Assembly: GCF_006345805.1 (NCBI RefSeq)
Contig: NC_043009.1
Coordinates: 23,560,001-23,624,000 of the forward strand
Reading direction: 5' to 3'
Origin: Octopus sinensis
Taxonomy: Eukaryota
Length of the DNA stretch: 64,000 bases
This document shows positions 43,690 through 44,066 of the stretch, one piece after another. Both the position numbers and the translations under genes were made by a program. Every line of letters begins with the position of its first letter. Position 1 is the first letter of the stretch. The notes beneath the pieces are model-generated. The model was not told the origin of the DNA. It made no database searches and saw nothing but the letters and a program-made list of their open reading frames with translations.

Positions 43690-44066
43690 AAACACAAGGC
43701 CTCAGATTTTGGGGAAAGGATTAAGTCGATTCCATCGACCCCAGTATGTAACTGGTACTTATTTGCGACCCCGAAAAGATGAAAAGCAAAGTCGATCTCA
43801 GCGGAATTTGAACTCAGAACGTAACGGCAGACGAAATACCTATTTCTTTACTACCCACAAGGGGCTAAACACAGAAGGGACAAACAAGGACAGACAAACG
43901 GATTAAGTCGATTACATCGACACCAGTGCGTAACTGGTACTTAATTTATCGACCCGAAAGGATGAAAGGCAAAGTCGACCTCGGCGGAATTTGAACTCAG
44001 AACGTAACGGCAGACGAAATGCCGCTAAGCATTTCGCCCGGCGTGCTAACGGTTCTACCAGCTCGC
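43690..44066 (-). mobile_element. Nested SINE B dimer: a B2 copy whose tail abuts gtatttcgtctgccg of a second B copy
   Basis: Junction at 43839/43840: gtaaagaaatag|gtatttcgtctgccg in the sense orientation. Confidence 0.85.

What the first reader, a model, noticed from the sequence alone, without database searches (positions are those of the whole stretch)
43690..44066. A B2 SINE inserted into another B SINE at the same position as the Tx1 LINE
Seen, in sense: the SINE junction is AAAGAAAT-ag-GTATTTCGTCTGCCG (43839/43840); the Tx1 3' junction is AAAGAAAT-tc-GTATTTCGTCTGTCG (53553/53554). Two different elements 10 kb apart share the same site to within 1-2 nt in a roughly 230-bp host SINE. Inference: B2 uses the Tx1 endonuclease and therefore targets its own family, building self-nested arrays. 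Caveat: insert and target are homologous, so a TSD cannot be separated from simple duplication.
Basis: partly seen in the sequence, partly recalled or inferred. Interest (0 to 1): 0.75.

Follow-up and report, generated by a model that had tools for sequence, protein, structure and literature searches.

The report
Retrotransposon landing site inside a SINE
In this octopus-like DNA, one 15-base spot in the head of an abundant short repeat (SINE) has been hit at the same nucleotide and in the same orientation by an L1/Tx1-like LINE and by two related SINEs, which is target preference of a kind already known for Tx1 elements but aimed here at their own SINE partners.

Summary
Both junctions read as quoted, and the motif GAAATNNRTATTTC occurs 3 times in the window against 0.06 expected.

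- **The LINE.** The LINE at 58819-53554 (minus strand) sits inside a B SINE and is flanked by a 15-bp target-site duplication, GTATTTCGTCTG[C/T]CG (SINE positions 51-65).
A full-length related SINE (42857-43059) is inserted in an old SINE at positions 52-65. It has a 14-bp duplication, ATATTT[T/C]TTCTGGC.
- **The flagged locus.** It is a 399-bp composite (44072-43674) flanked by one duplication, ATTATTCTGCAGACA. It consists of a complete-looking B unit followed by a SINE that starts at position 51 and has a different tail. The most likely history is that a B copy entered an older SINE at the hot site, and its 5' end was joined through homology, which hides its own duplication.
- **Shared machinery.** All three SINE tail types align with one another and with the 3' ends of Argonauta Tx1-like LINEs.
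- **How strong the preference is.** It is a preference, not strict specificity. Three of about 12 mapped events hit this site. The basic target motif is TATT, and only heads with T at position 52 are occupied.

The closest precedent is Tx1-Mar with SINEU in crocodilians. No same-species DNA could be fetched, so the genome-wide test is still open.

The parts
44073..44087 (-). Upstream copy of the target-site duplication ATTATTCTGCAGACA that flanks the whole composite of the finding
   Evidence: 15/15 match with 43673-43659
43840..44072 (-). Complete-looking B SINE unit of 233 nt with tail ...GCCCCTTGTGGGTAGTAAAGAAATAG. Under the preferred model, positions 1-65 (44072-44008) come from the host and positions 66-233 (44007-43840) from the inserted B copy
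   Evidence: nhmmer profile positions 2-215, E 1.4e-67; sequence
44008..44022 (-). GCATTTCGTCTGCCG, SINE positions 51-65 of the upstream unit. This is the presumed hidden upstream copy of the insertion-site duplication; it differs from the downstream copy at position 52 (C against T)
43674..43839 (-). 3' part of the host SINE. It starts at position 51 (GTATTTCGTCTGCCG) and has a different (A1) tail, ...CCTTCCAGTAGAAAGG
   Evidence: nhmmer profile positions 50-215, E 9.1e-45; alignment
43659..43673 (-). Downstream copy of the duplication ATTATTCTGCAGACA
58820..58883 (-). 5' part (positions 2-65) of the B SINE that hosts the LINE. Its last 15 nt (58834-58820), GTATTTCGTCTGCCG, are the upstream copy of the LINE's duplication
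53554..58819 (-). L1/Tx1-like LINE of 5266 bp. ORF1 lies at 57661-58389, the APE endonuclease at 56620-57108 and, in another frame, 56259-56672, and RT plus zf-RVT at 54003-56123. The reading frames are broken. The 3' end is ...TGTTTGGCAATAAAGAAATTC with no poly(A)
   Evidence: nearest solved relative is human LINE-1 ORF2p, E 1e-45
53390..53553 (-). 3' part (positions 51-233) of the same B host. Its first 15 nt (53553-53539), GTATTTCGTCTGTCG, are the downstream copy of the duplication. The host's own duplication, GATAAGG, lies at 58887-58881 and 53389-53383
   Evidence: the empty-site join gives one SINE, profile positions 2-215, E 2e-57
42520..42560 (+). Head (positions 3-43) of an old, decayed host SINE
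   Evidence: nhmmer E 5.9e-4; contiguous with the other host pieces after the empty-site join
42835..42856 (+). Host positions about 44-65. The last 14 nt (42843-42856), ATATTTTTTCTGGC, are the upstream copy of the duplication made by the A2 SINE insertion
42857..43059 (+). Full-length A2-tail SINE (tail ...GGCCTTGAGCCAAAATTTGAAATCC) inserted at the same site and in the same orientation as its host
   Evidence: nhmmer profile positions 2-215, E 7.5e-56
43060..43150 (+). 3' part of the host from position 52. The first 14 nt (43060-43073), ATATTTCTTCTGGC, are the downstream copy of the duplication
   Evidence: the join of the host pieces aligns as one SINE, profile positions 2-138, E 4e-22

Best explanation
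**What it is.** The tRNA-like head of the window's main SINE superfamily contains a preferred landing site for a lineage of L1/Tx1-like LINEs and for the SINEs that carry their 3' tail.

**Proposed steps.**
1. The LINE endonuclease nicks the bottom strand between SINE positions 50 and 51, just 5' of (G/A)TATTTC on the top strand.
2. Reverse transcription of an RNA ending ...GAAAT plus 2 nt starts at that nick.
3. The top strand is cut 14-15 nt downstream, after position 65. This gives a duplication of positions 51/52-65.

**How the flagged locus arose.** An older SINE with a B-like body and an A1 tail had inserted at ATTATTCTGCAGACA. Later a B RNA was copied into its head at the hot site. Insert and host are near-identical there, so the free top-strand end (...GTATTTCGTCTGCCG) annealed to the homologous stretch of the new cDNA and primed second-strand synthesis from that point. 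The result is a seamless 'positions 1-233 plus 51-end' structure with no visible duplication.

**Shown:** the two duplication-flanked insertions at this site, the shared tails, the outer duplication, and the enrichment over chance.

**Inferred:** which enzyme nicks, how the 5' end was joined, and the order of events at 43840.
For: 1. The LINE 58819-53554 lies inside a B SINE with a 15-bp duplication at positions 51-65. Joining the flanks restores one SINE.
2. The A2-tail SINE 42857-43059 lies inside an old SINE with a 14-bp duplication at positions 52-65, in the same orientation. Joining the flanks restores one SINE.
3. The B junction of the finding is at the same nucleotide. The three junctions read GAAATTC|GTATTTC, GAAATAG|GTATTTC and GAAATCC|ATATTTC, so the motif occurs 3 times against 0.06 expected.
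4. About 15 independent SINE heads lie in the window and 3 are occupied. P is about 4e-10 for random positions. TATTT occurs 301 times in the window and about 5 of those sites are in SINE heads; 3 of the 4 insertions that used a TATTT site are in heads, which gives P about 2e-5.
5. The B, A1 and A2 tails align with one another and with the 3' ends of Argonauta hians Tx1-like LINEs. The last 14 nt of the window LINE equal those of B copy 63759.
6. The LINE has an APE endonuclease, RT and zf-RVT. Its RT is nearest to human L1 ORF2p among solved structures.
7. The outer duplication ATTATTCTGCAGACA pairs the 5' end of the B unit with the 3' end of the A1-tail unit. This excludes a truncated SINE that merely landed next to a B copy.
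8. The host 3' part carries about 10% private changes in positions 66-172, against about 2% for the B unit. This fits an older host.
9. There is precedent. In crocodilians, SINEU and Tx1-Mar share one target and form tandem insertions that sandwich a duplication (PMC4494074).
Against: - There are only three events, all in one 64-kb window, and the window was chosen because of this coincidence.
- The B event has no duplication of its own. The presumed copies differ at position 52 (C upstream, T downstream).
- A test for a chimeric age structure within the B unit was inconclusive: 2 private changes in positions 10-65 against 2 in positions 66-172.
- At least 8 other SINEs with these tails lie in non-SINE, AT-rich DNA. 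Two heads with T at position 52 are unoccupied (20440 and 63578).
- The window LINE shares only its last 14-17 nt with the B tail.
- The composite at 63281-63759 has a breakpoint at the same position but does not fit a simple nested insertion.
- The host subfamily consensus is unknown, so its 'private' changes may be subfamily markers.
Confidence: 0.65

Rival explanations
1. One-step chimera or dimeric master. While an A1-tail SINE RNA was being copied at ATTATTCTGCAGACA, the reverse transcriptase switched at position 51 to the 3' end of a B RNA. Alternatively, a dimeric SINE transcript was retrotransposed whole.
For: A single duplication flanks the whole composite and no inner duplication is visible. 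The composite at 63281-63759 joins a CORE-type SINE head to B at position 51/52, and B to B at position 17. This looks like template switching or recombination. Chimeric retrocopies made by template switching are known for L1 (Buzdin et al., cited in PMC4494074).
Against: The switch point would have to coincide, to the nucleotide, with the 3' junction of two duplication-proven insertions. That is a coincidence of roughly 1 in 170. The two units appear to differ in age. No second copy of this dimer is present in the window.
Confidence: 0.13
2. There is no extended specificity. The endonuclease only prefers a short AT-rich motif (TATT), and the SINE head is hit repeatedly because it carries that motif and the SINE is very abundant.
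For: Duplications elsewhere begin ATTATT, TAATAAG, CTATTTTG, ATATAAG and GATAAGG. In Argonauta they begin TATTATC, ATTAGTG and CTATTTC. Only heads with T at position 52, which creates TATTT, are occupied, while 10 heads with C at that position are not. The T variant weakens the local hairpin, so sequence rather than structure seems to matter.
Against: TATTT occurs 301 times in the window and only about 5 of those sites are in SINE heads, yet 3 of the 4 TATTT-type insertions are in heads (P about 2e-5). All three have the same orientation and a duplication of 14-15 bp that ends at the same position.
Confidence: 0.15
3. DNA-level rearrangement (unequal crossing-over, replication slippage or tandem duplication between neighbouring SINEs) or an assembly artefact produced the dimer.
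For: The insert and the host are homologous, so recombination is possible. The window is an assembled scaffold with a 100-N gap at 24139-24238.
Against: The two units have different tails and different divergence. The breakpoint sits exactly where a complete B 3' end meets the site used by two duplication-flanked insertions. An overlap collapse during assembly would merge two SINEs rather than create a dimer.
Confidence: 0.05

Closest known systems
Tx1-Mar LINEs and SINEU SINEs of crocodilians (Kojima 2015, PMC4494074)
   Same: A Tx1-type LINE group and its dependent SINEs insert at one defined place in an abundant repeat, with duplications of about 16 bp and tandem insertions that sandwich a duplication. 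In that work the shared target was used to infer the LINE-SINE partnership.
   Different: There the target is a third-party DNA transposon (Mariner-N4_AMi) and the SINE heads come from snRNA genes. Here the target lies inside the tRNA-like head of the dependent SINE superfamily itself, so the elements nest within their own kind. The preference seen here (about 25% of events, n about 12) is closer to SINEU-1 (23%) than to SINEU-3 (90%).
Tx1L of Xenopus and other target-specific Tx1-group LINEs (Keno in U2 snRNA genes, Kibi and Koshi in microsatellites, Dewa), as summarised in PMC4494074
   Same: An APE-type endonuclease LINE of the L1/Tx1 group with a defined target sequence and a defined 3' end that is not poly(A).
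   Different: A SINE as target is not among the targets named in the parts of that paper read here. Clade placement of the window's LINE was not tested.
Alu-into-Alu insertions driven by the L1 endonuclease preference for TTTT/AA (own knowledge)
   Same: A SINE carries a short motif that its partner's endonuclease likes, so SINEs accumulate inside SINEs.
   Different: In Alu the sites are A-rich linkers and tails, and the effect is explained by a 6-nt motif. Here the enrichment exceeds what the 5-nt motif predicts, and the cuts are at fixed positions in the head.
Octopus tRNA-derived SINEs OK, OR1 and OR2 (Ohshima and Okada 1994, cited in PMC4758252 and PMC4824008) and the 'tRNA-Deu / tRNA-Core' SINEs of Octopus annotations (PMC8967140)
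   Same: Abundant tRNA-derived SINEs of octopods. The window's second SINE type carries a CORE-like GGCACCTTGGGCAAGT segment.
   Different: No reference sequences were available, so the equivalence of the window's B/A1/A2 superfamily to any named family is untested.

Membership tests
L1/Tx1-group non-LTR retrotransposon | N-terminal APE-type endonuclease followed by a reverse transcriptase in ORF2, with an ORF1 upstream | tested here: met
   PF03372 at 56620-57108 (E 1.2e-8), PF00078 (E 5.4e-30) and PF13966 zf-RVT (E 3.3e-6) at 54003-56123, and an ORF1 at 57661-58389. The frames are broken, so this copy is not intact.
L1/Tx1-group non-LTR retrotransposon | RT closer to L1-type than to other LINE groups | tested here: met
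   Among solved structures the best match is human LINE-1 ORF2p (E about 1e-45), against R2 at 1e-20 or weaker.
L1/Tx1-group non-LTR retrotransposon | Phylogenetic placement of the RT inside the Tx1 clade rather than L1 proper | not testable with these tools
   No named Tx1 reference sequences could be fetched. The only support is indirect: L1-Tx1 is the L1-type group reported in Octopus annotations (PMC13282606, PMC8967140).
Target-specific Tx1 family (criterion of Kojima 2015: one kind of sequence in more than 20% of flanks) | Recurrent insertion at one sequence, in one orientation, with target-site duplication | tested here: inconclusive
   The only LINE copy in the window is in the site. 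Counting the tail-sharing SINEs, 3 of about 12 mapped events (25%) are in it. The sample is too small and the window was pre-selected.
tRNA-derived SINE (SINE2) mobilised through a LINE-derived 3' tail | tRNA-related head with A and B boxes | tested here: inconclusive
   By eye the head has TTAGCACGCCGG (A-box-like) and GAGTTCAAATTCC (B-box-like). ARAGORN calls no tRNA in the window.
tRNA-derived SINE (SINE2) mobilised through a LINE-derived 3' tail | 3' tail shared with a LINE | tested here: met
   The B, A1 and A2 tails align with the 3' ends of Argonauta Tx1-like LINEs and with the end of the window LINE.
tRNA-derived SINE (SINE2) mobilised through a LINE-derived 3' tail | Copies flanked by target-site duplications | tested here: met
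   Duplications of 7-16 bp were found for 10 copies.
SINE sharing its partner LINE's target (SINEU / Tx1-Mar type) | LINE and SINE found at the same position of the same target repeat | tested here: met
   The LINE, the A2 SINE and the B SINE all lie at SINE positions 50/51-65. The evidence comes from within the window only.

The most novel reading that the evidence does not exclude
The head of this octopod SINE superfamily is a dedicated landing pad. The endonuclease of a Tx1 lineage reads about 15 bp of it (TATTTCGTCTGCC-like). LINEs and their SINE parasites therefore pile into existing SINE copies, a 'safe haven' that spares genes. The C/T polymorphism at SINE position 52 switches a copy between resistant and susceptible. 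Nesting of this kind would also generate many of the hundreds of 'unclassified SINE families' reported for Octopus.
Probability: 0.3. Interest if true: 0.65.

Novelty: new member of a known kind. Interest (0 to 1): 0.45.

Why it matters
If it holds genome-wide, this would be a clear invertebrate example of a LINE-SINE pair that shares a target.

- The target would be the SINE itself. That gives a mechanism for self-nested SINE arrays, and for composite 'families' that inflate repeat libraries of octopus genomes. In those genomes SINEs make up about 8-12% of the DNA, and most SINE families are unclassified (PMC13282606).
- It would identify the LINE partner of a major octopod SINE superfamily.
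- It would offer a natural substrate for studying how an APE-type endonuclease reads a long target: T or C at position 52, occupied or empty.

Tried and rejected
**Attempts to reach more DNA of the same species, all without success**
- A search with the LINE RT found nothing above 59% identity. The best long contig was Argonauta hians.
- A second LINE of the window gave the same picture.
- A 52-residue peptide translated from the SINE found no protein at all.
- An exact-pattern scan of metagenome contigs with the B tail gave only chance hits, and none contained the SINE.
- Scans of viral and prokaryotic genome contigs with the SINE core gave nothing.
- A search of paper texts for the SINE sequence gave nothing.

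**Ideas considered and rejected**
- A 5'-truncated SINE that merely landed next to a B copy. The outer duplication pairs the far ends of the composite.
- Priming by annealing of the nicked target to the RNA 3' end. The primer end ...GAAATAC is not complementary to ...GAAAUAG.
- The hairpin CGAAATGC/GCATTTCG as the recognised feature. It is strong in one host (z -5.8), but weaker in the preferred T variant and absent in the decayed host.
- Apparent breakpoints at positions 62-65 in copies 41223 and 42316. By eye these are old full-length copies whose heads have decayed.

**Inconclusive or negative tests**
- The test for a chimeric age structure inside the B unit was inconclusive.
- Rfam and ARAGORN gave nothing relevant to the finding.

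Full report
**Source of the window.** The origin was not given. The window is 60% A+T, full of microsatellites and packed with tRNA-derived SINEs. Its LINE proteins have their best long-contig relatives in the octopod Argonauta hians, at 57-59% identity. It is therefore octopod-like DNA, but the genus was not determined. No host gene was seen among ORFs of 100 aa or more.

**Observation.** Sense is the minus strand.
- The sequence across 43840/43839 is ...GGGTAGTAAAGAAATAG|GTATTTCGTCTGCCG.
- The sequence across 53554/53553 is ...GGCAATAAAGAAATTC|GTATTTCGTCTGTCG.
- I built a profile from 12 SINE copies of the window. It puts 44071-43841 at profile positions 2-215, the adjoining 43840-43674 at 50-215, and 53553-53390 at 51-215.

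**Anatomy of the flagged locus.** The structure is wider than the quoted coordinates.
- From 44072 to 43840 there is a complete-looking 233-nt 'B' unit.
- From 43839 to 43674 there is a SINE that begins at position 51. It has a B-like body but a different tail, ...CCAGTAGAAAGG, which I call A1.
- The 399-bp composite is flanked by a perfect 15-bp direct repeat, ATTATTCTGCAGACA, at 44087-44073 and 43673-43659.

This repeat pairs the 5' end of the B unit with the 3' end of the A1-tail unit. The composite is therefore not a truncated SINE that happened to land beside a B copy. Either an older A1-tail SINE was later entered by B, or the composite was made in a single event.

**The LINE.**
- The element at 58819-53554 is 5266 bp long. 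It has an ORF1, an APE-type endonuclease, an RT and a zf-RVT domain.
- Its RT is closest to human LINE-1 ORF2p among solved structures.
- ORF2 is split over at least three frames, so this copy is dead, or the assembly has errors there.
- It lies inside a B SINE whose 5' part is 58883-58820 (positions 2-65) and whose 3' part is 53553-53390 (positions 51-233).
- The 15 nt GTATTTCGTCTG[C/T]CG are present on both sides.
- Joining the flanks with one copy of the repeat restores a single SINE (profile positions 2-215, E 2e-57). That SINE has its own duplication, GATAAGG.

This is a textbook target-primed insertion with a 15-bp duplication at SINE positions 51-65.

**A third case.** On the plus strand, an old decayed SINE is broken twice.
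- Its head (42520-42560) is followed by an antisense tRNA-type SINE (42561-42825; duplication GACAAAAT / GACAAAAAT).
- Next come host positions about 44-65 (42835-42856).
- Next comes a full-length SINE with an 'A2' tail (42857-43059; profile positions 2-215, E 7.5e-56).
- Last comes the host from position 52 (43060-43150).
- The A2 insert is flanked by ATATTTTTTCTGGC and ATATTTCTTCTGGC, a 14-bp duplication of positions 52-65.
- Joining the host pieces gives one SINE (profile positions 2-138, E 4e-22).

The same site has therefore been used, in the same orientation, by a third element, and this time both ends are visible.

**More than chance?** The junction motif GAAATNNRTATTTC occurs three times against 0.06 expected, and none of 100 shuffles reached 3.
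- The profile finds about 15 independent SINE heads, and the family covers 5.1% of the window.
- Three of those heads are occupied at this site.
- For about 12 mapped insertion events, the probability of three or more hits on those 15 positions at random is about 4e-10.

A fairer null model allows for the endonuclease's short motif.
- Duplications elsewhere start ATTATT, TAATAAG, CTATTTTG, ATATAAG, GATAAGG and A[C/T]AACAA.
- In Argonauta they start TATTATC, ATTAGTG, CTATTTC and TATTAAT. The basic preference is therefore TATT-like.
- TATTT occurs 301 times in the window, with about 5 of those sites in SINE heads.
- Of the four events that used a TATTT site, three are in heads (P about 2e-5).

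The head site is therefore favoured beyond the short motif. One caveat is that the window was selected for this coincidence. The third case, however, was found afterwards by looking where the hypothesis predicted.

**Which heads are hit.** Position 52 is C in 10 heads and T in 5. All three occupied sites have T (or ATAT), which creates TATTT. Two T-52 heads are still empty, at 20440 and 63578. The site is the 3' arm of a hairpin, CGAAATGC-loop-GCATTTCG.
- The hairpin is strong in the LINE's host (z -5.8).
- It is weaker in the T variant.
- It is absent in the decayed host.

Sequence rather than structure therefore seems to be what is read.

**Who supplies the machinery.** The B, A1 and A2 tails are versions of one module...CTG..GCC(C)TTGTG(G/C)...(A/T)(A/T)GAAA... 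They align with the 3' ends of two Argonauta Tx1-like LINE copies and of Argonauta SINEs (...GGCCCTTGTGGCTAATAGAGAAATC).
- The window's LINE shares only its last 14-17 nt (GGCAATAAAGAAAT) with B.
- B's true partner is therefore probably a sister LINE subfamily that is not present in the window.
- The LINE and SINEs with two different tail variants use the same site. This suggests that the preference belongs to the whole LINE lineage.

This step is inference. No enzyme was tested.

**Why the B event shows no duplication.** With a 15-bp staggered cut, the free top-strand end is ...GTATTTCGTCTGCCG. In a B cDNA the same 15 nt exist at positions 51-65.
- Annealing there, followed by second-strand priming, would yield host 1-65, insert 66-233, host 51-end. 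That is the seamless structure observed.
- In the A2 case the host site had diverged (ATATTTTTTCTGGC against GCATTTCGTCCGTC in the insert). A full-length insert with both copies of the duplication resulted.

This is a mechanistic inference from what is known of microhomology-guided 5' joining in L1-type elements.
- Weak support: in positions 66-172 the host 3' part has about 10 private changes, mostly transitions, against 2-4 in the B unit. This suggests an older host.
- The matching test inside the B unit was inconclusive.
- The two presumed copies of the duplication differ at position 52.

**Rivals.**
- **One-step chimera by template switching, or a dimeric master.** This fits the single outer duplication. 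It is hinted at by the odd composite at 63281-63759, which joins 80 nt of a CORE-type SINE head to B from position 51/52 (ATATTTTGTCTGCC), followed by B from position 17. But the switch would have to fall on exactly the nucleotide used by two duplication-proven insertions.
- **A motif-only explanation.** This is disfavoured by the counts above, but it could still account for part of the effect.
- **Recombination or misassembly.** This does not explain the different tails, or the complete 3' end at the junction.

**Comparison with what is known.** Many Tx1-group LINEs are target-specific.
- Tx1L inserts in the Tx1D transposon, Keno in U2 genes, and Kibi and Koshi in microsatellites.
- In crocodilians the SINEU families share the Mariner-N4_AMi target of Tx1-Mar LINEs. 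They show 16-bp duplications and tandem insertions that sandwich a duplication (PMC4494074).

The present case works the same way. What differs is the target, which is the tRNA-like head of the dependent SINE superfamily itself, so the elements nest in their own kind.
- I found no report of this for cephalopods in the papers searched.
- Octopus annotations do list active L1-Tx1 LINEs and hundreds of unclassified SINE families (PMC13282606).
- Membership of the LINE in the Tx1 clade proper was not tested.

**Limits.** No DNA of this species or of a close relative carrying this SINE could be fetched. Argonauta (44 kb) has related tails and the same TATT-type targets. It also shows tandem and tail-to-tail SINE pairs. 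Its SINE head is different, so the specific site could not be tested there.

**Verdict.** The B-into-SINE event itself, and the identity of the enzyme, are inferred. This is a new member of a known kind, target-preferring Tx1-type LINEs with SINE partners that share the target. Interest is moderate.

Noticed in passing
window 63281-63759 (+): A composite of 80 nt of a CORE-type SINE head, then a B SINE starting at position 51/52 (ATATTTTGTCTGCC), then a second B starting at position 17 directly after the first B tail. A possible degenerate duplication flanks the whole (TTATCTTCGTC upstream, TTATATTGTC downstream). It does not fit a simple nested insertion and may reflect template switching at the same breakpoint.
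   Followed up: partly
window 42561-42825 (-): A different tRNA-derived SINE is inserted antisense in the other arm of the same head hairpin of the old host SINE, with duplication GACAAAAT / GACAAAAAT. Read on its own strand, the target is ATTTTTGTCCG, a mirror image of the main site. A diverged relative lies at 41879-41674.
   Followed up: partly
window 24867-24474 (-): Two A2-tail SINEs lie in tandem. The duplication of the upstream copy (TTGTTAAG) overlaps the first bases of the downstream copy, so the insertion was at the 5' boundary of an existing SINE.
   Followed up: partly
L002 14819-15313; L123 5319-5785 and 15640-15835 (Argonauta hians): Argonauta SINEs with the related tail ...GGCTAATAGAGAAATCTAT occur in tandem, tail-to-tail, and as successive insertions followed by the same flank (CTATTAATTTCAGGT). 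This is similar to the 'tandem insertions sandwiching a duplication' described for SINEU-3.
   Followed up: partly
window 1359-3011 (+) and 59820-61580 (+): Two further LINE reverse-transcriptase ORFs (RVT_1, E about 1e-31). Relatives of the second ORF also carry endonuclease domains (PF14529, PF03372). Its nearest named relative is from Argonauta hians at 57% identity.
   Followed up: partly
window 13136-13245 (+): A borderline Rfam match to a group II intron D1-D4 model (32.2 bits against a gathering score of 32; E 0.009), next to TA/TG microsatellite sequence. It is probably spurious.
   Followed up: no
window 24139-24238: A run of 100 N, so the window is a scaffold with a gap.
   Followed up: no
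window 28966-29403 (-): An ORF with two C2H2 zinc-finger-like motifs (CNLCARPC...HLRSH and CRACGREC...HAKVH) embedded in microsatellite-rich sequence. It is possibly a remnant of another retroelement.
   Followed up: no
window 44152-44457 and 45184-45996: Long, imperfect trinucleotide arrays (CAT/CAG/GAT-type) lie immediately upstream of the flagged composite. They create long spurious ORFs.
   Followed up: no
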